Part shown: positions 1 to 29,760 of the stretch, in pieces
How the letters are laid out: each line of letters begins with the position of its first letter
Numbering within the stretch: the stretch's first letter is position 1
NCBI RefSeq assembly: GCF_000315625.1
Contig: NW_005434654.1
Coordinates: 429,820-491,344, forward strand
DNA length: 61,525 nucleotides
Source: Guillardia theta CCMP2712
Lineage: Eukaryota > Protista > Cryptophyta
Direction of reading: 5' to 3'
The notes under the pieces: generated by a model
What the model was told of the DNA's origin: nothing
Seen by the model: the letters and a program-made list of their open reading frames with translations, nothing else
Databases searched by the model: none
Position numbers and translations under genes: made by a program

Positions 1-530
1 GCAGCAGTGGTGCCGCCCGTCGGTCCGCCGCTGCCCGGGCCCGGCCGGGCCCGGGAGCCTGGGCCGGGCCGGGACTCAGTCTTCAACTTTCAGGCGGCTT
101 AATGACCGCTTAACTGAAACTTTCAAAGTTGAAACGTCCGACGGTCCGACCCGGCCCGGGTCACCGGGCGCCGGGCTGGGCCGCGGGGTCAAGTTTCAAG
201 CCTATTATTCAAAGTTGCCGCTAGTACCGTCCACTCAGGCCAGGCTGGCCCACAGGGCCAGGACATTGGCCGATCATCACGAGAGTAGACCGTGCCGTCA
301 CTGAGTGTCCCAGGCTGATCCGACGGCGGAAGGCTTGACCCTGACTGGGACACCGTGATTGTGGCACAGTGGCAAACGGTCCGGCGGAGAAGGTCGGCGG
401 CGCCGCGTGGCGAGCGGTACGGCCAGGCCGGGCCGGGCGGCCCCCGGCCGCGCCGAGTCACTCAGTGACTGACGCCCGTACCGTACGGTAGTACCCGGGC
501 CCGGTCGGGCATCGGTCAACCGGGGCGGGC
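1..530. repeat. GC-rich intergenic block of short palindromic motifs (class I)
   Basis: Dense CCGG/GGCC/GTAC, TCAGTGACTGA and AAAGTTGAAAC/TTTCAAGTT words; no credible ORF; the same vocabulary recurs in other intergenic regions. Confidence 0.6.
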
Positions 531-544
531 CTGTTTCATCTCAG

Positions 545-960
545 CCTTCAAACTAGTACCCCTACCCCTACCGTCTCCATATAGGGGATATTCCATGCTA
601 CCCCTACCCTTCTTTTTAGACCTCCCTCACCCCACCCACCCATGGCTCCCATTTTACTCCCCGAATACCACCCAACCCCATTTTCTCGTTACAGACCTAA
701 TTCTACCCCACCCTATGCAATTTCACCCCAATTCGCCCTTACATTGACCCCTACCTTCATCTTCGTCGACTGAACTTCATTCAAACCACTACCCCATCTA
801 CTACCCCCACCCCCCTTTACAAAGACTCCTACGATGTGCAGTCTTTCATTGTACCCCCACCCCCAGATAACTCTCAATGCATCCCCACCACCCCCGTTCT
901 CCTAGTAAATACAGCACCCCCTGGTTCGTGAACCCTACCCATCCTATACACAATTTGGAT
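545..960. promoter_or_regulatory. TACCCC/CACCCC-rich upstream block (class II)
   Basis: Many TACCCC/CACCCC words on the + strand directly upstream of the LysM-TLDc gene. Confidence 0.4.
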
Positions 961-1161
961 TGCAATGGCGAAACTGCGTAGAGCGTTGGCTCTCGTCGCA
1001 GTGCCCTCCTCCTCATTCACCACGTTGCCCTCCTCCTCCTCCTCCTCCTCCCTCTCTGCTTCTTAGACTACACACCCTCCCTTCCTTCCTCGGTCGTCTC
1101 TAGCTTCCTGTCCCGGGATGTGCTGAAGCAGAGCTGGCGGTCAACCCTGCTTTCCCTGAGG

Positions 1162-4100
1162 ATGCAAACAACAGGCAGCGATACGTATGATCCCTCTGAC
1201 AGCACCGACATGGCAACATCCGAGAATCAGTCAGGGGTAGACGATGCTCAGATCAAGAGCAGCGAATCTTCTCAGGATGCAGCGGCGGCGTTGCAACGAA
1301 ACGAGGAGAAACCTGCTCAGCACATTGTGCAGAGCGGAGAGACGCTGGCAGGGATCGCCATTCGCTACGGCACCAACGTGTCAGACTTGAAGAAGCTCAA
1401 CCGGCTCCTCTGCAGCGATCTCTATGCCGGGCAGGGCCTGCAGGTCCCATGAAAGCGCGCCGTGCGGGTACAGGAGAGGACTGAGACTGTTTGCAGTTGC
1501 CGGTCAATCAGATGGCAGCGGAGAAGATTGCGAAGAAGAACGAGGTGGGTTCATGATCCTTTGTTGTCACTAGATGCTCTCTCTCCTTGAGACTTGAATG
1601 CTTGTTCGCTCAAATGACATGATGAATCACTCTTCGCTCGCCAAGGCTTCGTCGGCGGCCGCGGACGACGGTGGAACCGACGAGGCTACATGCATCTACG
1701 ACACAGTTGCTGTGTGGGACAGAGAGTCAGGTGACTGTTTGCCGTCTCATGCTCGTCGCTGACGCAAGGGGCGAAGGCTTCTTGTCATTGAGAGCGGAGC
1801 AGGAGGTACACGAGGGTCAGAAGGTGCCATGCACAATCGTGGGGTCGCTCTTCACGCCTGTACAAGACATGCTCCTCTCGAAGGTGCTCGCAGTCCTTGT
1901 AGGTATGGCTCCTGATGTGTTGGTGTAGATCTCGATCTTCCTGCGGCTCGTCATGGGGGACACCCTCGAGTTCAAGGTGGTGGTCAGGATATGGAACGGG
2001 CACAGGCAGCGAGACGTCTCCAAGAGCATGGCAGGCCTGGTGGAGACTGCCTGCGGGAACCCCGAGGAGGTTCTGTTCTCCTCCTCCGTGTTGACCATCC
2101 AAAGGCAGGTAAGGAGAGAGGCAGGCTGTTCTCCGTCTCTGTGGTCCTGTGCTGAGCGTTTCTTCCAGGGCACTGACGAGCCTGTCTACGAGGGCTTCGT
2201 GGTCGAGTGCGATCCCTCGGCGAACTCGCATGACTCTGCTGATCTCAGCATGTTCGCAAGGGCCCAGTCGAGCTGGGGGCTTCACCTGTCCGCGAACAAG
2301 ACCGTGTTGATCGGAATCAGCACCGAAGGGATCCAACAGTCCCCTCAGTCCGAGGCGCAGGTCGGGTACGTCAGGCGGCACGTCGCCGGGCCCATCCTGC
2401 ACAAGTTAGTCTGGGTGAACGGCAAGCAGGAGACAGAGAAGGGATTGAGGAGGAGGTTCGACAGCACGGATCACACCATCGCAGCCATGCTTGTTACGCA
2501 CTCAGCGCCCTGCCGTCCTCATCCGATCGTTCTCACCCTCGACTCCAACGAGAAGCTGATTGGCGCGGAGGAGGTGGACTTCGAGCTGGAGGATGAGGCT
2601 GCTGTGCAGCACGTGCTGGAGGTCGCGTCCTCCAACGAGACTCTGTGCCTGCAGGAGGAGATGTTGCAAGGAGTTCTCGACCAGCACGAGCTGAGCATCG
2701 ACGATGCCCCGCTCTTCGTCGGCCGCAACGACGAAGACGAGATGATCGGGGTGTGCTCGGACATCATCAGCTGGCCTCAGGACGTCTTCCAGCTCAGCGA
2801 GTCGCTTCCTCGACGGTATGTTCCCTTGTGCTCCGTGGGCTCCCGTGACCACCGCGTGACCTCTTCCGCAGATGCTCCCAGTGCGACTGGGAGCTCCTGT
2901 ACAGCACGAAGAGGAACGGGCTGAGCATGAACACATTTTTCCGGCTCGTGACGGGCCGCAGGGACACGATCATGCTGATCAAGGACTCGGGAGGCAGCGC
3001 GTTCGGAGCCTTCATCCCGTTCCCCTGGAAGCAGTCCAAGGATTTCTATGGCACGGGGGAGAGCTTTGTGTTCCGCATGAAGCCGACCTTGGAGCTGTTC
3101 AAGTGGGGGGGCAACGACTCCATGTTCGCGCTCACTAACCACCAGGGGATCCTGATTGGAGGGTCGGGCAGCCCCGCGATCTGGATCGACAGCGACTTCA
3201 ACAGGGGGACGTCAGGGGCGAACAAGACGTACAGGAGCAGGTTGGGCGGGGCTGCACGCTCCCTCCTCTTCCTCCCCGCCCCCGTGCGCGGGGGTTTCTG
3301 CGTGCTGCCTCCCCTTCGACCTCCCCAACTCTTCCCCTCTTTACTGTGCTGTTGCCCGAACCCGCTGCTCTCCCTTTTGCTCTCTGCTTGCCAACTCGAC
3401 CTTCCCCTTCCCCTCGCTGCCATGCGCGCTGAGCTGGGCCCAGGTGTCTCGCCAGCGATGAATCCTTCACCTGCATCCACCTGGAGGTCTGGGCAACCTT
3501 GCAGAACACGCACCAGTCGATGGCGTTCCTCCTCAACCGCAAGGACATCCTCCTGCAGATGATGATCGACCACCAAAAGGCTCTTAGCATCACCCTGCGT
3601 AAGTCCAGCTCGACGTCCTCCCTCTCCGACGTGCAGCAGAGCCATCCGCCAGCGCAGGCAGCGGAGGCCGAGAGGGAGGAGAAGGTGGAGAGGGAGGAGG
3701 AGGTGCATGAGACGAGGTTGGATGGCCAACCGACCTCCTCGCCTCCCGATGACACGGAAACAAGTCAGGAGCACCAGCAGGTGCTAATCGAGCCCTCATC
3801 CATCCCCCCAAACCCTCCTTATCCTCCTCCTCCGCATCTCCCTTTTTTTTTTCAGCTCCTCCTGCTCCTCCTGCTCCTCCTCCTGCTCCTCCTTCTCCTC
3901 CTCCTCCTACACCTCCTCCTCCTACACCTCCCGTGTCCCCTTCCTCCCTGCCGCATCCTCCATCCGTCAAAAAGTGAATATCCTGTGCAGCCACGGCCTC
4001 TTGGCTCACACCAGCGACCCAAGGCAAAGTGGACAGGAGAGGAGGTGACCTTGCTTGCTCCTGGTCGTTCTCGTTGACCCGCCCTCAGGTCCCCCTCGAT

Positions 4101-19877: not shown

Positions 19878-22800
19878 ATGGCCCACTACTGCGATACGGT
19901 TGGGATTGATCTTGGAACCACACGATCTTGTGTTGCTGTCTGGGATGGGACGCAGGTGAATCGCCAGGGACCTGCAGGCTTGTAGTGAGCATTGCTGCGG
20001 CAGGTGCACGTCATCGCCAACGAGAGCGGTGACAACACGACGCCATCCTGGGTTTGCTACCCTGACTTGAAGCAAAGACGAGTTGGAAAGGTTTGACGCC
20101 CTCCCGCTTGTCTTGTCTTGTGCATGAAACGAGCCTTCAGGCTGCTGAACGCGCCGGCACCAAGTATGCGAGCAGTGTGATTTACCATTCAAAGCGTTTG
20201 ATCGGCTGTCGATATGGCGAGAAAGTGATTCAGGTCTGTTGCTCTCCATCTCGAGGAGTTTGATCCTTCCCAAGACATCTGTCTGCCTCCTCGTGACATC
20301 TTGGGCTGCAGGATGCCGCTAACCTGCGATGGCCTTTCCGAGTCGTTGACCAGGTTGGTTGCAGTGACGTTGATGGTCAGCAGGTAGTCACATTCTTACA
20401 GGGAGACGGAGGAGCTGCCATTCAGATCACCGTTGCTGGGCAGCCGAAGATTGTGAGAACAGTGGAAGGTTCCAGCGCATGAGTGACGGTCTGTGCCAGG
20501 TGACCCCGGAAGAGGTTGGAGCCGGTATCCTTTCCTACCTCAAGAAGGTATGACTTGTTGTAGTGTGGTGCCTCTTCTCACTGCGTGCGTCAGGTTGCGG
20601 AAGAGTTCATCGGGCGGCCAGTCAAGAAGGTGAGGAGAAAGTCGGGAGGAGCGGTCAGAGCATGAACAAGGCTGCCAACAGGCGGTTATCACCGTCCCAG
20701 CATACTTCAACGATTCTCAGCGTCAAGCTACGAGGGATGCAGGCAGGGTATGGACGAGCAGCATGCGATGAGACGTGCCTTGATGGAGTTTGCAGATCGC
20801 TGGTCTTGAGGTCAAGAGGATCATCAACGAGGTTTGCCTTGTCCATGTGACCGCTGCTCTCTTTGTGACGTCACTCGGAAGCCGACGGCTGCTGCTCTTG
20901 CCTTTGGTGTGCTGGATTCTCATTCTATGGGCACGAAGAACTTGCTGGTGGACTGCTGCCGAGTGTTTGACGTCGTTGGTGAACGTAATGTTCAGGTGTT
21001 CGACTTCGGTGGTGGTACTCTCGACGTCACCATCATGCAAATCGAAGCGAACTCGATGAACTTCCTGGTCTCTTGCCGCCCGCGATCTCCTGCTCCTGCT
21101 CATTGCCTGCCCTGCCAGGTCCGTGCGACCGACGGAGACACGAGGCTGGGAGGCGAGGACATCGATGCAAGATTAGTCGACCACTTTCTTGATGTCTTCC
21201 AGAAGCACACTGGTTCCTCCCTCCCCTGTCGATCTTACCTGGCGGTCTGACGGAGAATGACAGGCGTCGACCTTGGTAACGCCAAGGAGAGCGACAAGAA
21301 GAAGAAGGTGGGTTGGACTCCTTGCTCGGCTGCCCCTTGACTGTCTTTCCCCCAGGCCCTCGCGAAGCTGCGAGCGGCAGCAGCACAGCTGAAGATCGAT
21401 CTCTCAAGGATGACGGAGTCCGACATCTGCCTCGACGAGCTCTACCAGGTAGGACAAGCTCGCCGTGTGGTGGGAGGAGGGTGAGAGGCTGGCAGGACGA
21501 GACGCTGGAGGCGAAGATGACGCGCGATGAGTTCGAGTCCTTGGTGAGTTCTCCTCCTCCCTTCCCTTCCTCCTTGCCCCCGCATGGCCGACGAGACGTG
21601 GGCAGGTCGGCGACTTGCTCGAGAGGGTCCGGCTGCCCGTGATGAGGGCGCTCGAGAAAGTCCATGGTGGGATGAAGGTGAGAGGAAGCTGGATGAGTCA
21701 CGACCGGCGCCCCTGACTGACGCCCTTCCCTCGCAGGCCGAGGACATCGACCAGGTGCGGGGCTGTCCGTCTGCCCTCGTCGGCCCGACGTGACATGCTG
21801 CCTCCCCAGGTTCTCCTCGTCGGAGGTTCCAGTCGCATCCCCAAAGTGCAGCAGATCCTTCAGGTTCTCCTTCCCCCCCCCCCCACCCCCCCAAAAACCT
21901 CACCCTCCATCTCACCCTCCTCGCCCGCTGACTTGATGTAACAGGAAATGTTCCCCAACAAGGAACTGTGCAGGAGGTTTGCTGCCTGCCCCTGCTGCTT
22001 CTCCTCCTCTCCCGCCTGCCCCTGCTGCTCCTGCTCCTCTCCATCTCCTTTTCCTTCTCGTTCTCTTCCCCGCTTCCTTCCCCTTCGTTTGCTCGTTGAC
22101 ACCCTGGTCAATCTTCTCGTTTCCCCGCGCTCATTCGTGTGCAGGATCAACCCAGACGAAGCCATTGCTGTCGGCGCAGCCATGGATGGCTCCCACCAGT
22201 ATCAGGTAGGCCCTTTGTCTTGGTCGTCCTCGTTCTCGTTCTCGTCCTCCGGCGTCGCCCTCCTTGCCGCTCACGCCATCGTACTCACTGTCGGGCTTGA
22301 AGATGGTGGATGTCGTTCCTCGAGCCCTCGGCGTCGCTACAGCCAATCACGAGGATCCATCACGCCAGGTAGAGGAGAGGAGAGGAGAGGAGAGGAGAGG
22401 AGAGAGGAGAGGAGAGGAGAGAGGAGAGGAGAGGGGACGAGAGAGTGTGAGAAAAGGAAGAGGTGAGTGGGGGAGAGGTAGGTGAGAGGAGAGGTGAGAG
22501 GAGAGGAGGAAGAGGAGAAGAGCATTTGCTGGTCAGCTACTCCTACCTGCGGGCGAACACTGGGAGGATGGACTGACCTGTATCCTCCAGTTCACAACCA
22601 TCATCATCCCAGCTTGCTCACCCATCCCCGAGGGAGGACTCATCGTTACCTCCTCCTTCGGAACCTCCCGTGACAATCAGACCGTGAGATTCGTTCCCTC
22701 TTCCGCCTGCCTTCGTACACCCTAACTCCCTCCATCCACTCTCTTCCACCACCCTCTCTCCTCTCCTCTTCTCTCTTTTCCTCTCTCCTTTGTCTCCCTC

Positions 22801-23686
22801 CTCTCCCTCCATCCCACTCCCCCCCTCGTCTCTTTTAGCCTCATGTCTCCTCTCGATCTTGCCTCTGACGCCACCGCCCCGCCTCTCCTCCTCCTGTGCT
22901 GGTCCACTGATGCGACACTTTTAGGGCGCGGACATCGAAATCTGTGAAGGAGAGGAGCGATACTTCGACGAGAACACCCACTTGGGAGGTGATGCTGCTG
23001 TTGCTCATGATGACGATGGTGGTGATGGTGGTGATGATGATGTGGGTTGTTTTGCGTGTGCCGGTGCTGCTGCGGCTGCACGAGGGATGGCAGGGCTGAT
23101 GGCGATGGTGCTGACGTCATGGGCAGAGTTCGAGCTGAGCGGACTTCCTCAACGAGGACGAGGAGAGATCACGATCAACGTCACCATGAGCGTCGACAAG
23201 GTGAAGGGCGCGGAGGTGAAGGAGGAGCAGGCGAGCCTGATAGGTCGATCCTCCAGGACGGAATCCTGACAGTCACTGGGACTGCGGAAGGGACTGACAT
23301 CAAGAAAGACATCTCGGTCAGAGCGAACAAGGGACGCATGTCAGAAGATACCATCCGCCGGCTTCAGGTCCGATGGATTTCTTGTTGAATGTTGTGCTGT
23401 GTGCCAGTGTTTGTTCTGCTCTTGTTGTGTTTTCGTTGTTTCCTCCACCCTCCCTCTCTCCCCCTTCCCTTTCCTTCTGAATTCCGTCACTCATCTACCT
23501 CATCCCATCTCACCTTGTCTTTACTGTCTCATCTCATTTTGTCTTGTGTTGTCCGGTCTCGCCTCCCCTTCCTATTGTTGCCAGTGTCTTGTTCAGCATG
23601 CTTCGTCGTTGACATGTTGCCCATGTTGATGTTGTTGCCAGACTGAGAACGAGGAGTATGAGAAGTACAACACGAGAGATCCCTGA
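19878..23686 (+). CDS. Divergent Hsp70/DnaK-family protein lacking most of the C-terminal lid, >20 introns
   Basis: [139 protein letters not shown]|[14 protein letters not shown]-stop (TGA 23684-23686). Confidence 0.9.
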
Positions 23687-23768
23687 AGTCTCTCTGCACG
23701 TGTTGAGTTGTTGCGTGCAACTCGTTGAAGCGACCAAGTCAATAAAAGATACTGAGGATGCGTGCGAA

Positions 23769-23802
<34 letters not shown>

Positions 23803-23939
23803 ACAGGAGGCAGAACGATCGCTCAGTGCATGTGGTGGTGATGGTGGTGACGGCGGCGACCAAGGTGACAACAGATTGACCAAGAGAGGAGCAGGAAGAG
23901 GAGATTTGAAATGCAGCAGCAGATGTTCGAGTTTCTTTG

Positions 23940-25056
23940 TCACCCCCTTGTCGCTGTCACTGCTCGTGCTATTAGCTTGCACATGCCTGGCTCCTCCTCC
24001 TCCAGCTTCTTCATCGCAGATCGCAAGTTTGCGGAGTTGATGAAGTTCTGAGTGAAGGCGACGGAGTCCTGCGAGAGTCGATTAGAAAGAAACAGCGAGG
24101 ACGAGGAGAGCAGGCGAGGGGGAGAGGAGAGAAGAGGGGAAGACGGTGATGGTTGAGAAGGAATGGAGAGCAAGTGTTAAAAGTTGAGGAAGAAGGGGGA
24201 GAAGGGAGGAAGAAGGGAGGAGAAAGGAGGAAGGAGGAGGAGGAGGAGGAGGAGGAGGAGGAGAAGGAAGTGGGTAGGAGGAAGGAGGAGGATATGGTGA
24301 TGGTGTGGCATCACCTCCAGATTCAGGACGCAGTGCCAGTAGCCGCGAGGGATGAAGACGACGTCTCCGGCCTCTTGGATGCCCCACAAGAAGGGTCGAG
24401 AGTTGAGCAAGTCCCTCCTCCTCTCCTCTACGTCCTCCTCCTCGCTCTCCTCTCCGTCCTCCGAACTTTGTTCTCCTCGTCCTCGCTTTCTTCCGGCATG
24501 TTCTCCCCCTCTCCCACTCTTCTCCTTCCCGTCCTCTCCCTCCTCACACAGGAGAGGCAGCAGCGTTCCCTTGAGCCACTGGAGGACAGGAGGAGGCTCT
24601 ACGACTTTCCCTCCTTGCCCCGAGAGGGCAGGGAGCGAAAGGACGCCAAGAGGATTCAGCTCTTCTCCCTCCTGCTGTTCTCGTCAGGTCGTGGGAAACT
24701 CCCTCCTCCCTCCCCCCTCCTCCTCCTCCTTTCAGCTCGCCAGTTCCTCATCCTCTCGTCTCCTCTGTTCCAACTCCCCTTTCTCGTTGACTTCCTCTTC
24801 GTTGTTCTACATCCCTTTCCTCTCCTCGCTTCCCTCTCCTCCCTCTCCTCCTCCTCCTGCTTCTCCTCCTCCTTCCCTCACCTCCTTCCTCCCCTTCCCT
24901 CTCACCTCATCCTTGCAGTCTCTGCACATAATCCAGAGCTTTCGGCCGCTGATCAGAAAATTCCACGCAGAAGTTCCCTTGGGGTCCACGTGCCATCCTG
25001 ATACCAGAGAGATCAGATTCGAAGTCACAAGTCGCGATGATGATGATGATGATGAC

Positions 25057-25100
<44 letters not shown>

Positions 25101-28002
25101 CAACGACGACGATGACGATGATGATGATGATGATGATGATGACGATGGTAATGATGGAAATGATGATGAATATGATTATGATTATGATGATGGAGATGAT
25201 GAAGATGATGGGGAGGAGGAGTTACAGCAGCAGCAGCATGATGATGATGGGGAGGAGGAGTTACAGCAGCAGCAGCAGCAGCGGGCACGGAGATCAAGGG
25301 TGGCAAGGAGGGGGAGATGGAGAGGAAGACGAATTGGAAAGTCGAGAATTGAAGGAGTTGAAACTCGCACGCACTTGATCCGGATCCCCTTGGCCCGATG
25401 ACCAGCCACCGCCTCTCGTCAAGGAGGGAGGGATTCCCGAGCAGATCCCTCTCATCCTCCTCCTCCTCGTCCTCCTCTCCAGCTTGCTCGCGCTCCCTCC
25501 CCCGCCTCTCTCGCTCACGATCGTGCGCGATCAGCTCTAACAGGTCGTCGTCAAACGTAGGAGGAGGTCGAATCATATCGAGAAGAAGGCGAGGAACTTG
25601 ATCGTCAAAGAAGTATAGAGGTTCATATCCCTCTTCCTGCTTCTGCTCCTCCTGCTCTTTCTCCTGCTCCTGCTGTTCCTCCTCACCCCCTCGGTCCTCC
25701 TTGTCCGCCTCCCCTAGCTCGCCCTCCCCCCGGCAGCTCCTCATGTATTCGCAGTAGTTCCCCAGACTCATCTTGATCGTGTACGGAGGGTCTCGAGCCC
25801 CGGGCACAAGAACAGCTGCAGGCAAGTCCGTGAGAGGAGGCACGACAGGAGCGAGGAGGAAGCAACGGGGCGAGTTCGAGGCGGAGGGAGGAAAGGAGGG
25901 ATGGATGGAGGGTGGAGGAGCAGGAGCAAGAAGGAGCAGGAGGAAGAGGGTTGGGAGGAGGCGGAAGGAGGCAGCAGGGAAACAGGAGGAGGAAGCACAG
26001 AACGACAAGAAGCAGCACAGCATCACCTGACTTCTTATTCCCGTAGATCTCCAGCAGACAAGCGAGCGTGAGCTCCGACTCTCCTCGTCCTCCCAGCATT
26101 GCCCGCTGACACCCTCGCAGCATCGCCGGCCTCCTCCCCCTGTCGTAGACCCTCTTGAAGTCCCCGACATCCACTTCTTCCATCCTCACGCTATCTATCT
26201 CCCGCAGCCACCTTGCGCCGCAGTTTCGCATGCGCCTCAGGATGCTGTTGACCCCGCTCCTCCCGCTCCCTCCGCTCCTCCTCCAACATCTGAGAGCCCC
26301 AAAATAGACGATGCTCGACGCATTCATACGTAAGCTCAACATTGACACGTACGTTCCCAGCCACGAGGATCTGAAGACAACACAAGGCTCCTCCTCCTCC
26401 CTTCGCAGCGACTGCAGCAACGCCTTTCGCCATAGTTGCTTTCTCGTCATGACGTCACGGAACAGCCTGCAGGTCTCGACCAGCATCGCCAGCATGGAAG
26501 CAGGGGCGGGAGCATCCGACTCCACGAGGGCCATCGCAAAGATTTTGACCAGCAATGTTGCACTGAGGGAGGATATAGAAGAGACGATCGTCTGGGAGAG
26601 AAGGACGGTTCATAGCGGCACAAACGATGGCTGATCACATACAGACACGACAACATCTCCAACACAAGTCTATCACTAGCAGGCAGCGGGAGGGGTTGCA
26701 GGGGCGTGACCACAGGCATCAGCGTGCAGTACTCAGCGAAAGGGACCACAGGGCTCCATAGTCCATACCTGTGCGATGTTGCTGCGGATGAGAAGGGACG
26801 TTGGGTTCGTGAGGTCCCGGCCGTTGTGTTGAAGGATTTCATCATCTCTTCCGATGACGCAGGTTTCCAACTTCGCAAGGGATCACAAACGATAAAGACA
26901 AGAGGGCAGGGGGATGAGGTGGGGAAAGAGGTAGGGAGGAGGAAAGGAGAGGAGGAAAGGAGAGGAGGGAGAGGGAGGGGCGGGGAGGGATGGAGGGAGG
27001 GAGGGAGAGTAGGGCAGAGCAGGGTAGAGTGGAGGAGGGGGGAGAGGAAACTTTACCTGCCAAACCATTTCCTCTTTGAACGCAAGCGCTCGGAGGAATC
27101 GCCCCGCTGTCCCTGCACGAGCGCCTCCTCTCGCTGCCGAGATCTTGGATCGCACAAGCTGGTTGACCAGAGCTTTCGGATGCTCTGCCCTCGGACCTCA
27201 GCCTCCTCTAACGGCAGCGCTCACAGCAAGGGCACCTGAGTAGAGTGCAGGGAGGAGGTCGTCTACCGGGATCGCACAATCGTGCATGCCCAGCGACAGC
27301 AGTCTCCTCACCCCCGTGGAAGAGAGGAGGTACGCATGAGCGCACGTGCTGAACCCGGCATGGCAGGTCCGCTCCGTGACCGAGGGCCCGTCGTAGCCAT
27401 GCAAGTTCCTGCCAAGGTACAAGAGATCCCACTGGACACACTGCCTCTTCAGCCGCTCCACCTCCTCCCCGACCACAGCCAGCACCTGCTGCAGGCTCAG
27501 CGCTACCCGAGCTGGATGGTTAGCTGACCTCTCTCCAGCGGAGGTGATGAAGCTCGCGATCCCTGACAAACGTCGGGAAGACGGTGACGTCATCCTCCAA
27601 GATAAGGAAGAGGCTCTCCCCACCCCCGGGCTCGCAAAGGACCTCGTCGGCTCGGCACCATGCCAGGTGGTGTGTGGCAAAGCATGCGAGCTCCTGGTCG
27701 CTGACCTCTCGAGCATGGTAGTCGATGAGGTCGATCACGTCAGGAGGATTTTGCCCCAGTGCGACCCATCGCTCCTGCAGCCCCTCGAGCTCCAGCGAGT
27801 TCATCCGCCATCCTCCTGCCTTCCTGAACCTGAAGCCATGATGGAGGAGAACTTGATCACGGCAGGCAGCTACGGAATCCCCCTCCACTGCATCGATGAA
27901 AACCATCTCTTTCCCCGCCTGCGCCCATGGTATCGTCTCCTCTAGCCATAAGCGCCGATCCCGCCGCCTCTTCAGGTTGAGCAAGAACGTGAGCAGACGC
28001 AT
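23940..28002 (-). CDS. Putative GT25 glycosyltransferase – F-box – JmjC (JMJD6-like) fusion protein
   Basis: GT25: LNLKRRRDRR, IDAVEG, ACFATHHLAW, LILEDDV, WDLLYLGRN, AHAYLLS..G.RRLL, IPVDDLLP. F-box-like: ISSLSATLLVKIF...TCRLFRDVMTRKQLWRK. JmjC: [69 protein letters not shown]. In-frame GT-AG junctions can be drawn (27528-27486, 27235-27185, 27056-26871, 26768-26592). Each domain is well supported; the fusion itself is inferred. Confidence 0.7.
25035..25210. repeat. (GAT)n microsatellite in an intron
   Basis: Directly visible. Confidence 0.9.
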
Positions 28003-28479
28003 GGCAGGATCATGGGATCAGCAAGCAACCTCTTTGTCCTACCCTCTCGTCCCTCTCCCTCCCGCCCCGCCCCGCCCGAGCATCGTTCCACGACACGGCG
28101 CAGTACAGGGACTAGGGCATTGAAGCCCGGCAGCCGGCACCGAGTGTGGCACGGAACAGGAGGAGGCCCGACTGATCACTGCACGGGCCAAAATAATAAT
28201 AGCGACGTGCACTTGTAGTTCAAAACTTCCTAATTATTTTGAATATTATCAAAGAATATTTTAAATATAGTACAGAAAATCAAAATCGATACCCCAAAGT
28301 TTAAATAATTGGATTTTATGATTACCGGACACGAAAAGTCTTGTTTTGGGGACTCGTTATCCTGCAAGATTGTACCAGAGCAGGTCCGGGTGTGTAAAAG
28401 ACATTTGTACGAGCTCGTTTACAACAATTTTTGTCTAAAAAACAATTCGGAGAGTACAGGTGGGGTTGCAGTGTCGATG

Positions 28480-29760
28480 ATAGTCACAGACGGGGGTCCC
28501 TGAAAGGGCTGGCTGGCTCTGAAGGGGGTGGTATCGTCATTTTTGGGTTGGTATGGGTGGTGGGGTCATGAACGTACCCCTTATGGAGTAAACATGTTGA
28601 TGGGATAAAGGGGGTGACAAGGATCTGCATGCTGACTTAGGGCAGGGTAGCAGGACCTCCAACAGCCTGGGGTACCAGAGGGTACGATGAAGTGATGTGG
28701 GTGGGTACTACCAGGGGAAGGAGGGGGTGAAAGAGTAATTAAAAGGCCACCGAGTTAAATACAATTTTATTTATACAATGTTATAATAGAGTCCGGTTTC
28801 AAACCATGCGACTACTGCTACTGCTGGCAAATGTTATATGGAGTAGTAGGGGGTGGAAGCAGTGATAAGGGGTGGTACACGGGAAAAGAAAGGGTAGAGG
28901 GTACCTTAGGTACCCGTACCGAAGGAGTACATTCTGATTTTCTTTTTTTCCATTTTCCTTATTTTATTTTTTGTCGGAGCGAGGGGTGGGTGGGTGGGTA
29001 GCCAGGACGGTAACGAACTTTGGGGGTGGTGTGGCGTGCACCCTGTGTTGATTGGGGTACCCTGGTAGATGACTTTCGGCATGGGTGGGTGCTTTGAGTC
29101 GGATAGGGTGTCTTTGGAGACAGGGTACCGGAAATAAGATTAATTTTGTACTATAAGGGAGCTTCGATTTTATAAGAAAGTCAATATACAAAATTGCTCA
29201 AGTACGAAAGATCAAGAGAGCCGGGACGAGTTTGACACATCAGCAGGGGTACCTTATATTTTATTCGGACAGGGGTACGGTGGTGGAGATGCGTTCGGTG
29301 AAGTCTTCCAAGGGGGTGAGGAACCCTGTGGGGGTAGGGTGGTTATTAAGATCTGGTTAGAGAGGGGGTAGCGTTATAGGGCAACCAATGTACGGGTGGG
29401 TAGGGGGGGGGTAGTTAATTTGTTATTATCAGGGTGGTCAGGGTGGGGGTGATGATCCACGAGGGGGGTGATTAGCTTAAAAAAATGGGGTGGTGCGGGG
29501 GACCCCAACATGTTAGCGTGAATGTTTGGAGGGGTGGAACAGGTGGGTGAGCTTGCACCATGGGGGGTGGAGCCAACATATCACTGCCAGTATGTTCCGA
29601 GACCCTGACAGGTATCTTTCTTTCATATGTAAGACACTATATAAATTATAGATAGTGCTGCTCTACTCCTTGACTTCACTGATGGGTCGATCGGAAGTTG
29701 TATGGGGGTCCGGAGATGGGGGTCAATCACCCCACCCCCTTGTGTAGTAGTGGGGTGGGC
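28480..29760. promoter_or_regulatory. GGGGTA/GGGTGG-rich divergent-promoter block (class II)
   Basis: Numerous GGGGTAG, GGGTAC and GGGTGGGT words; no credible ORF; lies between divergently oriented genes. Confidence 0.4.

What the first reader, a model, noticed from the sequence alone, without database searches (positions are those of the whole stretch)
23940..28002. Candidate single-polypeptide hydroxylate-then-glycosylate system: GT25–F-box–JMJD6-like JmjC
SEEN: a complete GT25 domain (NLKRRRDRR, DAV, CFATH, ILEDD, WDLLYLG, AYLLS, PVDD) begins at ATG 28002 with no signal peptide. It can be spliced in frame through GT-AG introns (27528-27486, 27235-27185, 27056-26871, 26768-26592) into an F-box-like segment (TIVSSISSLSATLLVKIF...LWRK). 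This leads to a JmjC domain with intact Fe ligands (WHVD...YWH) and the 2OG Lys (GRKLW). No class I/II intergenic block separates the parts. KNOWN: the JmjC signature matches the JMJD6 subfamily, which performs lysyl C5-hydroxylation. GT25 includes COLGALT1/2, which galactosylate 5-hydroxylysine. F-boxes bind Skp1. Protists such as Dictyostelium and Toxoplasma regulate Skp1 by O2-dependent hydroxylation plus glycosylation using separate, non-JmjC enzymes. PLOD3 and mimivirus L230 fuse hydroxylase and GT but use a PLOD-type hydroxylase. INFERENCE: a cytosolic/nuclear enzyme that creates a hydroxy-amino acid and then glycosylates it, possibly on SCF components or substrates, acting as an O2/Fe/2OG sensor.
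Basis: partly seen in the sequence, partly recalled or inferred. Interest (0 to 1): 0.85.

Follow-up and report, generated by a model that had tools for sequence, protein, structure and literature searches.

The report
Fused glycosyltransferase–F-box–JMJD6-like hydroxylase gene
A probable cryptophyte alga expresses one 845-residue protein that joins a collagen-type (GT25) sugar transferase, a Skp1-binding F-box and a JMJD6-like oxygen-dependent hydroxylase, which suggests that some protists hydroxylate and then glycosylate lysines on intracellular proteins, a modification not yet described there.

Summary
Spliced cDNA contigs from three independent studies each cover 28099→23774 on the minus strand in one piece. 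The open reading frame is 845 aa: GT25, then an F-box-like segment, then JmjC.

- **GT25:** the family profile matches human COLGALT1 best (7e-34). The donor-site and catalytic residues are kept. The collagen acceptor-cleft residues are not.
- **JmjC:** the profile matches JMJD6 at 3.5e-42, against 6.6e-7 for the next family. All Fe and 2OG ligands are present.
- **F-box:** it is weak by sequence, but a model with the alga's Skp1 passed the controlled test.
- **Homologues:** collinear fusion homologues exist in a dinoflagellate, in *Prymnesium* and related marine contigs (with an extra N-terminal methyltransferase), and, truncated, in Picozoa.

The F-box–JMJD6-like module is the known JcdI/JcdH (Fbxo13) family, whose substrates are unknown (PMC9485057). 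I found no description of a GT25 fusion. Hydroxylate-then-glycosylate remains an inference, which I put at about 0.5. I class this as a new variant of a known kind.

The parts
28003..28099 (-). 5' UTR (minimum extent). It holds two short upstream ORFs: ATG 28083, and ATG 28013, which overlaps the main start out of frame.
   Evidence: The cDNA contig of X1 starts at 28099 and depth is zero upstream of 28166. The sequence was read.
27529..28002 (-). Exon 1, aa 1-158. N-terminal half of the GT25 domain: NLKRRRDRR with R16 (= COLGALT1 R354), and EDD with D137/D138 (= D436/D437).
   Evidence: Pfam PF01755 at 1.2e-6 and 29 bits, above the 24-bit cut-off. Profile alignment to COLGALT1. Splice joint.
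27236..27485 (-). Exon 2, aa 159-241. GT25 core: WDLLYLGRN, GFSTCAHAY, and PVDD with the catalytic-base equivalent D233.
   Evidence: Residue roles come from PMC12987934.
27057..27184 (-). Exon 3, aa 242-284. End of the GT25 domain (HPK...ALAFKEEMVWQ).
   Evidence: The ALAF..LVWQLE motif is conserved in all fusion homologues.
26769..26870 (-). Exon 4, aa 285-318. Linker carrying the conserved L-x-x-S-[DN]-I motif. It is spliced in frame to the F-box exon.
   Evidence: The 26769|26591 joint is present in X1, X2 and X4. The motif is aligned in all homologues, which are continuous ORFs or transcripts.
26424..26585 (-). F-box-like segment, aa 321-374, inside exon 5.
   Evidence: Pfam F-box-like at 0.029, below the cut-off. 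The family profile hits the F-boxes of FBXO4, FBXW7 and FBXO6 at 0.014-0.3. The Skp1 complex model scored 0.82 against a best control of 0.01.
26027..26591 (-). Exon 5, aa 319-506. F-box-like segment, the conserved F..SW motif, and the N-terminal part of the JMJD6-like domain.
25375..25815 (-). Exon 6, aa 507-653. JmjC part with Y574 (= JMJD6 Y131), two acidic low-complexity inserts, and [12 protein letters not shown] with S653 (= T184).
24906..24997 (-). Exon 7, aa 654-684. H656-x-D658 Fe ligands, N666, and the 2OG-binding K673.
24315..24671 (-). Exon 8, aa 685-803. A third acidic insert and the distal Fe ligand H797 ([12 protein letters not shown]).
   Evidence: Weak Pfam hits to JmjC_2, JmjC and Cupin_8.
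23940..24068 (-). Exon 9, aa 804-845 plus the TGA stop. Contains VAFTQNF and the C-terminal helix.
23774..23939 (-). 3' UTR (minimum extent). It overlaps the 3' end of the convergent plus-strand gene.
   Evidence: The X1 contig reaches 23774. The plus-strand contigs end at 23797.

Best explanation
**Shown.** A nine-exon minus-strand gene (28002-23940) is transcribed and spliced into one mRNA. It encodes an 845-aa protein with no signal peptide. The protein has three parts: (i) an N-terminal GT25 GT-A glycosyltransferase, (ii) an F-box-like three-helix segment, and (iii) a JMJD6-subfamily JmjC Fe(II)/2-oxoglutarate oxygenase with a complete active site.

**Inferred.** The F-box docks the enzyme on Skp1, as shown for its relative JcdI/Fbxo13. 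The JmjC domain uses O2 and 2OG to hydroxylate a side chain on intracellular protein substrates, most likely lysine C5 as in JMJD6. The GT25 domain then transfers a hexose from a UDP-sugar onto that new hydroxyl. This mirrors the way COLGALT1 galactosylates 5-hydroxylysine, but with a differently built acceptor cleft. The protein would be a nucleocytoplasmic, O2-dependent enzyme that writes a two-step mark.
For: **One transcript**
- One spliced cDNA contig per run in three studies spans every exon. No contig retains intron 4.
- The ORF is intact at 845 aa.

**GT25 domain**
- Pfam is above the cut-off on exon 1 alone.
- The family profile matches COLGALT1 at 7.4e-34, against 3e-8 for mimivirus R655 and 9e-6 for a bacterial GT25.
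- A model of the close homologue P0001:1-349 (pLDDT 84) has COLGALT1 as its top Foldseek hit at 2.8e-14.
- R354, D436/D437 and the catalytic base D522 are conserved as R16, D137/D138 and D233. E523, which holds the Hyl epsilon-amine, is an acidic D234.

**JmjC domain**
- The profile matches JMJD6 at 3.5e-42 over residues 47-320. The next family, JMJD5, scores 6.6e-7.
- The Fe triad H656/D658/H797 and the 2OG residues Y574, S653, N666 and K673 match JMJD6 H187/D189/H273 and Y131/T184/N197/K204.

**F-box**
- The Skp1 (P0057) complex model scored 0.82 and the best of three controls scored 0.01. That mark was reached by 51 of 78 solved complexes and 2 of 108 mismatched pairs. The runs agree in at least 88% of contacts, and the partner's pLDDT is at least 61.
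- The interface uses Skp1 residues 99-164 and partner residues 3-45, the canonical site.
- JcdI binds Skp1 through the equivalent F-box and is an O2-limited dioxygenase (PMC9485057).

**Domain-fusion (Rosetta-stone) argument**
- The same GT25 to F-box to JmjC order occurs in P0033 (*Yihiella*, 801 aa), P0032 (741 aa), P0056 (*Prymnesium parvum*, 1172 aa) and P0014, P0015, P0018 and P0023.
- Truncated versions occur in P0006, P0010 (Picozoa cluster) and P0021.
- The two enzyme families joined here are the two whose characterised members make and glycosylate 5-hydroxylysine.
Against: - There are no biochemical data for any fusion member.
- COLGALT1's acceptor-cleft residues are not conserved. 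K470 is N185 here, and Y494/W495 are T205/C206 in a family-specific GFS[TS]CAHAY motif. The acceptor need not be Hyl.
- JMJD6 produces 5S-Hyl, whereas collagen Hyl is 5R (PMC9371714).
- The substrate and reaction of the F-box-bearing JMJD6-like clade are unknown (PMC9485057).
- The full-length model of homologue P0032 shows no confident inter-domain packing (pTM 0.46, linker pLDDT below 50).
- The Skp1 model may pass from memory of solved Skp1-F-box complexes. It shows likeness, not binding.
- Logan contigs cannot exclude rare alternative isoforms.
Confidence: 0.5

Rival explanations
1. **SCF substrate receptor.** The F-box places the protein in a Skp1-Cul1 ligase. The JmjC and/or GT25 domains mainly serve to bind targets that are then ubiquitinated, or to mark them first. 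The end result is degradation rather than a stable glycan mark.
For: The F-box-like segment is modelled on the canonical Skp1 site. F-box proteins usually carry a substrate-binding domain C-terminal to the F-box. JcdI is an abundant Skp1 interactor (PMC9485057).
Against: Both catalytic sites are fully intact and conserved across distant lineages. That would not be needed for a binding module alone. In Dictyostelium the effect of JcdI overexpression on O2 sensing needed catalysis but not the F-box. This rival is not exclusive of the main reading.
Confidence: 0.15
2. **Uncoupled activities.** The two enzyme domains act on different atoms or different substrates. For example, GT25 might glycosylate Ser, Thr, Hyp or a glycan. 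The fusion would then only co-localise or co-regulate them, with Skp1 acting as a folding or turnover partner.
For: The Hyl-Gly recognition residues of COLGALT1 are replaced. Bacterial GT25 enzymes act on sugars (8xlz is a beta-1,4-galactosyltransferase). There is no modelled inter-domain contact. JcdI needs Skp1 for solubility.
Against: The GT25-JmjC linkage is kept in at least four distant lineages and in two architectures. The fusion-type GT25 subfamily is single-copy here and occurs only in this gene. The acidic residue that holds the Hyl amine is retained (D234).
Confidence: 0.2
3. **Skp1 or another SCF core subunit is the substrate.** The enzyme docks through its F-box and then hydroxylates and glycosylates Skp1 or Cul1. 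This would be a second, JmjC-based version of the PhyA/Gnt1 Skp1 pathway.
For: Skp1 binding is modelled. Protist Skp1 is a known target of hydroxylation and glycosylation (PMC9485057).
Against: The genome has a strong Gnt1-type (PF11397) homologue at 1.6e-55, so the classical pathway is probably present. An F-box occupies the Skp1 C-terminal helices rather than presenting them. Nothing in the data points to a Skp1 lysine.
Confidence: 0.07
4. **Artefact.** Two adjacent genes (GT25 and F-box-JmjC) are joined by read-through or chimeric assembly, and the fusion protein is not made.
For: Logan contigs are assemblies, and the raw-read run X17 was too thin to show joints. Pfam sees the F-box only weakly.
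Against: The exon 4 to exon 5 joint is a clean in-frame GT-AG splice found in three studies. The F-box exon has no in-frame ATG upstream of the F-box. An in-frame TGA lies 18 nt before the acceptor, and the first ATG, at M337, cuts helix 1. Homologues in other phyla are continuous ORFs with the same domain order.
Confidence: 0.03

Closest known systems
JcdI/Fbxo13 and JcdH: F-box-bearing JMJD6-like dioxygenases of protists, plants and fungi (Boland et al. 2022, PMC9485057)
   Same: An F-box-like sequence lies directly N-terminal to a JMJD6-subfamily JmjC domain. Skp1 binding was shown for JcdI and is modelled here. The proteins are intracellular O2/2OG-dependent enzymes. Atlas neighbours of the F-box-JmjC part are clusters carrying F-box-like, Cupin_8 and JmjC domains.
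   Different: JcdI and JcdH have no glycosyltransferase domain, and that paper lists no GT25 fusion. Here the F-box is internal, about 320 residues from the N terminus.
Human JMJD6 (lysyl C5-hydroxylase, PDB 3LD8/6GDY)
   Same: It is the best solved relative at 3.5e-42. The Fe triad is identical, and the 2OG-binding Tyr, Asn and Lys are kept, with Thr replaced by Ser.
   Different: JMJD6 has no F-box and no GT domain. The alga also has a separate canonical JMJD6 gene (contig C79), which aligns to the fusion's JmjC at 24% identity over aa 451-677 and 59% over aa 782-818. The fusion's JmjC carries three acidic low-complexity inserts.
COLGALT1/GLT25D1 (collagen 5-hydroxylysine beta-galactosyltransferase, GT25)
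   Same: It is the best solved relative of the GT25 domain by sequence profile (7.4e-34) and by fold. The donor-site Arg, the EDD motif and the catalytic-base Asp are conserved, and an acidic residue stands at the E523 position.
   Different: COLGALT1 is an ER-lumenal enzyme with a second, N-terminal GT-A lobe and a Hyl-Gly cleft formed by K470 and Y494/W495. The fusion has no signal peptide and no N-lobe, and carries N185 and T205/C206 at those positions.
PLOD3/LH3 and mimivirus L230 (hydroxylase-glycosyltransferase fusions for collagen)
   Same: They follow the same logic: a 2OG lysyl hydroxylase and a glycosyltransferase for the product sit in one polypeptide.
   Different: They use a PLOD-type double-stranded beta-helix oxygenase, not a JmjC domain, and a different GT-A domain. 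They work in a secretory or viral collagen context and have no F-box. This comparison rests on established knowledge. LH3 appeared here only as a weak fold hit (6te3).
Skp1 hydroxyproline glycosylation pathway (PhyA, Gnt1, PgtA, AgtA/Gat1) of Dictyostelium and Toxoplasma
   Same: It is a nucleocytoplasmic, O2-dependent hydroxylation followed by glycosylation, and it is linked to Skp1 and the SCF ligase.
   Different: It uses separate enzymes, a prolyl 4-hydroxylase rather than a JmjC domain, and GT families other than GT25. Its target is Skp1 Pro. The alga has its own Gnt1-like gene.

Membership tests
GT25 (Pfam PF01755 / CAZy GT25) | Significant match to the family model | tested here: met
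   Exon 1 alone scores 29 bits against a 24-bit cut-off, E 1.2e-6. All six full-length homologues are above the cut-off. The own-genome scan also finds the locus.
GT25 (Pfam PF01755 / CAZy GT25) | GT-A donor site (Arg of NLxRRxDRR, the EDD metal/UDP motif) and the catalytic-base Asp of PVD(D/E) | tested here: met
   R16, D137/D138 and D233 align with COLGALT1 R354, D436/D437 and D522.
COLGALT-type collagen Hyl galactosyltransferase | Hyl-Gly acceptor cleft (K470, Y494/W495), N-terminal GT-A lobe, ER targeting | tested here: not met
   The protein has N185 and T205/C206 at the cleft positions. It has no N-lobe and no signal peptide, and the domain starts at residue 3.
JMJD6 subfamily of JmjC hydroxylases | HxD...H Fe triad and the 2OG-binding Tyr, Thr/Ser, Asn and Lys | tested here: met
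   H656, D658 and H797, with Y574, S653, N666 and K673.
JMJD6 subfamily of JmjC hydroxylases | Closer to JMJD6 than to other JmjC-only hydroxylases over the whole catalytic domain | tested here: met
   A profile that includes the window's exons scores JMJD6 at 3.5e-42 (residues 47-320), against JMJD5 at 6.6e-7 and PHF8 at 1e-5.
JMJD6 subfamily of JmjC hydroxylases | Lysyl C5 hydroxylase activity | not testable with these tools
   This needs an enzyme assay and mass spectrometry.
F-box | Match to the F-box sequence models | tested here: inconclusive
   Pfam F-box-like gives E 0.029 and 14.6 bits, against a 24.3-bit cut-off. Homologue P0015 gives 0.0031. The family profile's top PDB hits are the F-boxes of FBXO4, FBXW7, FBXO6 and FBXL3, at E 0.014-0.8.
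F-box | Binds the C-terminal helices of Skp1 | tested here: met
   This is a model only. The score is 0.82 and the best control 0.01. The mark was reached by 51 of 78 solved complexes and 2 of 108 mismatches. Contact agreement is at least 88% and the partner's pLDDT is at least 61. The interface covers Skp1 residues 99-164. The pass may reflect memory of solved Skp1-F-box complexes.
JcdI/JcdH (Fbxo13) F-box-JMJD6-like family | F-box directly N-terminal to a JMJD6-like JmjC domain; flanking H1/H4 homology segments | tested here: inconclusive
   The domain order is met.

The most novel reading that the evidence does not exclude
Several protist lineages (cryptophyte, haptophyte, dinoflagellate, Picozoa) may have a nucleocytoplasmic hydroxylysine-glycosylation system. 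A Skp1-docked JMJD6-type oxygenase would make 5-hydroxylysine on intracellular proteins, and a fused GT25 domain would cap it with a hexose. In haptophytes a third fused methyltransferase domain would add a further step. This would be an O2-graded protein glycosylation outside the secretory pathway. It would also be the first clue to the chemistry of the whole JcdI/JcdH family.
Probability: 0.4. Interest if true: 0.85.

Novelty: new variant of a known kind. Interest (0 to 1): 0.72.

Why it matters
**JMJD6.** This enzyme hydroxylates more than 100 lysine sites in human nuclear proteins (PMC9371714). In the papers read here I saw no glycosylation or other follow-on modification of that hydroxylysine described.

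[quoted passage not shown] It takes part in O2 sensing, yet its substrates and reaction are unknown (PMC9485057).

**What the fusion adds.** It links this clade to the glycosyltransferase family that includes the enzyme known to glycosylate 5-hydroxylysine, and it is conserved across distant algae. That gives a concrete hypothesis: the product is a hydroxy-amino acid that then gets glycosylated. It also gives a natural construct to test it with. If true, it adds a new class of intracellular, oxygen-dependent protein glycosylation, alongside O-GlcNAc and the Skp1 hydroxyproline glycan.

Tried and rejected
- **Finding the window's own protein in the databases.** A search of 1.84 billion representatives with exon 1 gave a best hit of only 47% identity. 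The two word-index searches did not list it either. Tools that need one reference therefore saw the spliced 845-aa protein only exon by exon. It was analysed whole only in scripts.
- **Single exons against the PDB.** These gave nothing useful. Family profiles were needed.
- **Raw-read RNA run X17.** About 6% of the run was read. Depth on this gene was at most 1.3, so no joints, ends or strand could be called.
- **The odd 27703/25450 joint and the high depth at 25301-25491.** These come from other, more abundant transcripts that share GAG-rich low-complexity words. They do not belong to this gene.
- **P0022 (BTB plus GT25).** It first looked like a second link between a cullin adaptor and GT25. 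It lacks the first ~95 residues of the GT25 domain, and the rest is identical to P0003. It is probably an ORF-calling or assembly artefact, so I did not use it.
- **Domain trees for GT25 and JmjC.** They are unresolved apart from the methyltransferase-bearing, haptophyte-type clade (100/99). They cannot show whether the fusion arose once or several times.
- **Full-length AlphaFold model of homologue P0032.** It shows two confident domains, a low-confidence linker and a pTM of 0.46. It says nothing about how the two active sites sit relative to each other.
- **Literature searches.** I found no paper on a GT25-JmjC fusion. The library is incomplete, so this is not proof of absence.


Full report

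I built a nine-exon model:
- E1 28002-27529
- E2 27485-27236
- E3 27184-27057
- E4 26870-26769
- E5 26591-26027
- E6 25815-25375
- E7 24997-24906
- E8 24671-24315
- E9 24068-23940

It translates without a stop into 845 aa.

I laid the contigs of three runs on 23200-28900. These runs cover the exons and leave the introns and the upstream spacer bare, so they are cDNA. They come from three studies dated 2014, 2018 and 2019. Each gave one contig (2720, 2801 and 2451 nt) that runs from the 5' UTR (up to 28099) to the 3' UTR (down to 23774). All eight introns are removed at exactly these coordinates, each with GT..AG ends on the minus strand.

The mean depth in the bin 26638-26828 is 7.59, 18.2 and 6.76 in the three runs. 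That equals the contig depth multiplied by the exon's share of the bin. No assembled molecule therefore retains intron 4 and stops at the TGA near 26733.

The 2026 raw-read RNA run had too few reads on this gene to add anything.

An independent argument comes from exon 5. It has an in-frame TGA 18 nt upstream of its acceptor and no ATG before the F-box. Its first in-frame ATG, at M337, would cut off helix 1. The F-box-JmjC part therefore cannot be translated properly on its own.

**2. What the three parts are**

*GT25.*
- Exon 1 alone passes the Pfam gathering score.
- I built a profile from the window's exons plus homologues. It finds human COLGALT1 at 7.4e-34, mimivirus R655 at 3e-8 and a bacterial GT25 beta-1,4-galactosyltransferase at 9e-6.
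- An AlphaFold model of the closest homologue's domain has pLDDT 84 and pTM 0.86. Its Foldseek ranking is the same: COLGALT1 at 2.8e-14, then R655, then bacterial GT25.
- I mapped the residues named in the 2026 COLGALT1 cryo-EM paper (PMC12987934) through the HMMER alignment.
  - The UDP-contacting Arg (R354) is R16 here.
  - The EDD motif (D436/D437) is D137/D138.
  - The catalytic base D522 is D233, so these three are conserved.
  - E523, which anchors the epsilon-amine of hydroxylysine, is Asp (D234).
  - The cleft that selects Hyl-Gly is different. K470 is N185, and the 'YW' pair Y494/W495 is T205/C206. These lie inside a GFS[TS]CAHAY motif that all fusion homologues conserve.
- The domain therefore looks catalytically competent and COLGALT-like, but its acceptor site is its own.

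*JmjC.*
- A profile of the C-terminal part, again including the window's exons, hits JMJD6 at 3.5e-42 across residues 47-320. The next families are JMJD5 at 6.6e-7 and PHF8 at about 1e-5.
- The residues that the JMJD6.Fe.2OG structure paper names are H187/D189/H273 for iron and Y131, T184, N197 and K204 for 2OG (PMC6663879). They align to H656/D658/H797 and to Y574, S653, N666 and K673.
- Compared with the alga's own canonical JMJD6, the domain carries three acidic low-complexity inserts (aa ~540-570, ~604-630 and ~728-772). All three are present in the cDNA.

*F-box.*
- Sequence evidence is marginal. Pfam F-box-like gives E 0.029.
- A family profile's best PDB hits are the F-boxes of FBXO4, FBXW7, FBXO6 and FBXL3, aligned on those F-boxes, but only at E 0.014-0.8.
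- I therefore ran the controlled complex test. I used the alga's Skp1 (P0057, an MMETSP transcript that matches the Skp1 gene on contig C5 almost exactly) and the first 90 residues of exon 5.
- The score was 0.82 and the best of three controls was 0.01. That mark was reached by 51 of 78 solved complexes and 2 of 108 mismatched pairs. The runs agree in at least 88% of contacts, and the partner's pLDDT is at least 61.
- The interface is the canonical one: Skp1 residues 99-164 against partner residues 3-45.
- Many Skp1-F-box complexes have been solved, so the pass shows likeness to an F-box rather than proving binding.
- The literature supports this reading. Dictyostelium JcdI/Fbxo13 has an F-box-like sequence directly N-terminal to a JMJD6-like JmjC domain. 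It binds Skp1 directly through that sequence and needs Skp1 for solubility. It is a dioxygenase limited by physiological O2 (PMC9485057).
- The nearest Atlas clusters to the F-box-JmjC part of homologue P0033 carry F-box-like, Cupin_8 and JmjC domains. They come from Euglenozoa, Chlorophyta and Ascomycota.

**3. Relatives with the same architecture**

The exhaustive search with exon 1 and two word-index searches gave collinear fusion proteins.

| Protein | Length | Source |
|---|---|---|
| P0033 | 801 aa | complete transcript ORF, dinoflagellate *Yihiella yeosuensis* |
| P0032 | 741 aa | EukProt, species not shown |
| P0056 | 1172 aa | *Prymnesium parvum* AB1Y20_003393 |
| P0014, P0015, P0018, P0023 | 1149-1169 aa | marine assemblies |

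- All of these pass Pfam for both GT25 and JmjC. They align end to end with the window's protein.
- The *Prymnesium*-type group has an additional N-terminal class I SAM-methyltransferase domain. That domain gives weak Pfam and PDB hits, the nearest being small-molecule O-methyltransferases.
- Shorter entries break off in or just after the F-box: P0001 and P0029 (JGI 'GT25'), P0006, P0010 (its cluster includes Picozoa sp. COSAG01) and P0021. They look like truncated gene calls.
- The linker motif L-x-x-S-[DN]-I, encoded by the window's exon 4, is conserved in all of them.

**4. Genome context**

- The assembly is 87.1 Mb in 669 contigs. The best relatives of its Skp1 are MMETSP and EukProt transcripts, one labelled *Cryptomonas paramaecium*. 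The organism is probably a cryptophyte.
- It has a separate intronless canonical JMJD6 on contig C79.
- It has four other GT25 loci of a different type. Two of them are intronless ORFs of 1002 and 892 aa with signal-anchor-like N termini.
- It has a Gnt1-type (PF11397) Skp1 GlcNAc-transferase homologue at 1.6e-55.
- The fusion-type GT25 profile finds only the window's gene.

**5. How it most likely works**

*Shown:*
- There is one mRNA and one ORF.
- All three domains have intact signature residues.
- The architecture is conserved in distant lineages.

*Inferred from the families:*
- The F-box docks on Skp1.
- The JmjC domain hydroxylates a protein side chain with O2 and 2OG, most likely Lys C5 as in JMJD6.
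- The GT25 domain transfers a hexose from a UDP-sugar to that hydroxyl, as COLGALT1 does for 5-Hyl.

The strongest argument is the domain fusion itself. The families joined here are the ones whose characterised members make and glycosylate 5-hydroxylysine. PLOD3 and mimivirus L230 show that evolution has fused those two steps before, using other folds.

Four points weigh against this reading:
- COLGALT1's Hyl-Gly cleft is not conserved.
- JMJD6 gives the 5S product, whereas collagen Hyl is 5R (PMC9371714).
- The reaction of the F-box-bearing JMJD6-like clade is unknown (PMC9485057).
- The full-length model of P0032 gives no inter-domain geometry (pTM 0.46).

I put the coupled hydroxylate-then-glycosylate mechanism at about 0.5. 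The rivals are set out in their own section: an SCF receptor role, uncoupled activities, Skp1 itself as the substrate, and an artefact.

**6. Comparison with what is known, and novelty**

- The F-box-JMJD6-like module belongs with JcdI/JcdH, a described family. Placement within a clade was not tested.
- The GT25 domain is a GT25 member but not a COLGALT orthologue, because the defining acceptor and N-lobe features are not met.
- Four literature searches and the supplement of the JcdI paper show no earlier description of a GT25-JmjC fusion. That supplement lists only the canonical *Guillardia* JMJD6.
- I class it as a new variant of a known kind: a bifunctional hydroxylase-glycosyltransferase built from different folds, intracellular and attached to Skp1.

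**7. Limits**

- Most external tools saw the spliced protein only exon by exon. Alignments of the whole protein were made in scripts.
- Logan contigs show that a form is present, not that other forms are absent.
- The complex test is a model.
- No activity was measured.

Noticed in passing
P0056, P0014, P0015, P0018, P0023 (residues ~80-300): The Prymnesium-type homologues carry a third enzyme domain in front of GT25-F-box-JmjC. It is an N-terminal class I SAM-methyltransferase with weak Pfam hits (Methyltransf_25, Methyltransf_12, MTS). Its nearest PDB hits, also weak, are small-molecule O-methyltransferases such as DnrK. This would make a three-enzyme polypeptide.
   Followed up: partly
L001 (G000:C145:6229-9651) ORF 196-3204 minus strand; L002 (G000:C402) ORF 245-2923 plus strand: Two intronless ORFs of 1002 and 892 aa have hydrophobic N termini and a central GT25 domain. 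They are long single exons in a genome whose window gene has nine exons. They belong to a GT25 type different from the fusion's, because profile A3 does not find them.
   Followed up: partly
L009 (G000:C79:163332-167054) ORF 1474-2397 minus strand: This is a canonical, apparently intronless JMJD6 orthologue of 307 aa in one ORF. It is separate from the fusion gene.
   Followed up: partly
L019 (G000:C35:214233-217868): The locus gives a strong match to PF11397, the Gnt1-type Skp1 hydroxyproline GlcNAc-transferase family (1.6e-55), in a 441-aa open frame. The classical Skp1 glycosylation pathway may therefore exist in this alga.
   Followed up: no
window 20800-23797 (+): A convergent, highly expressed plus-strand gene with Hsp70-like motifs ([22 protein letters not shown]) has an intron at 23365-23638. 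Its 3' end, at about 23797, overlaps the 3' UTR of the fusion gene, which reaches 23774. A GAC/GAG repeat at 23770-23802 draws many loose read ends.
   Followed up: partly
window 25030-25300 (intron 6, minus strand): Intron 6 holds a long (CAT)n/(CGT)n-type trinucleotide microsatellite. It reads as a His-rich run in the frame of the preceding exon 6 and a Ser-rich run in another frame on the minus strand. cDNA depth across it is zero, so it is intronic and not coding.
   Followed up: yes
window 28083-28039 and 28013-27972 (minus strand): The 5' UTR holds two short upstream ORFs. The second overlaps the main ATG at 28002 out of frame, which may limit translation of the fusion protein.
   Followed up: no
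L006 (G000:C5:994160-997291) 1063-1650: The Skp1 gene has one in-frame intron that reads through as GDWYDPLLASVLTDFI, and a second intron before the last helices. The MMETSP transcript P0057 matches the spliced form and differs by one residue in the part compared.
   Followed up: partly
P0022 (507 aa, ENA): A BTB/POZ domain is joined to the second half of a fusion-type GT25 domain. The GT25 part is identical to P0003 but lacks its first ~95 residues. This is probably a gene-call or assembly artefact rather than a real BTB-GT25 fusion.
   Followed up: partly
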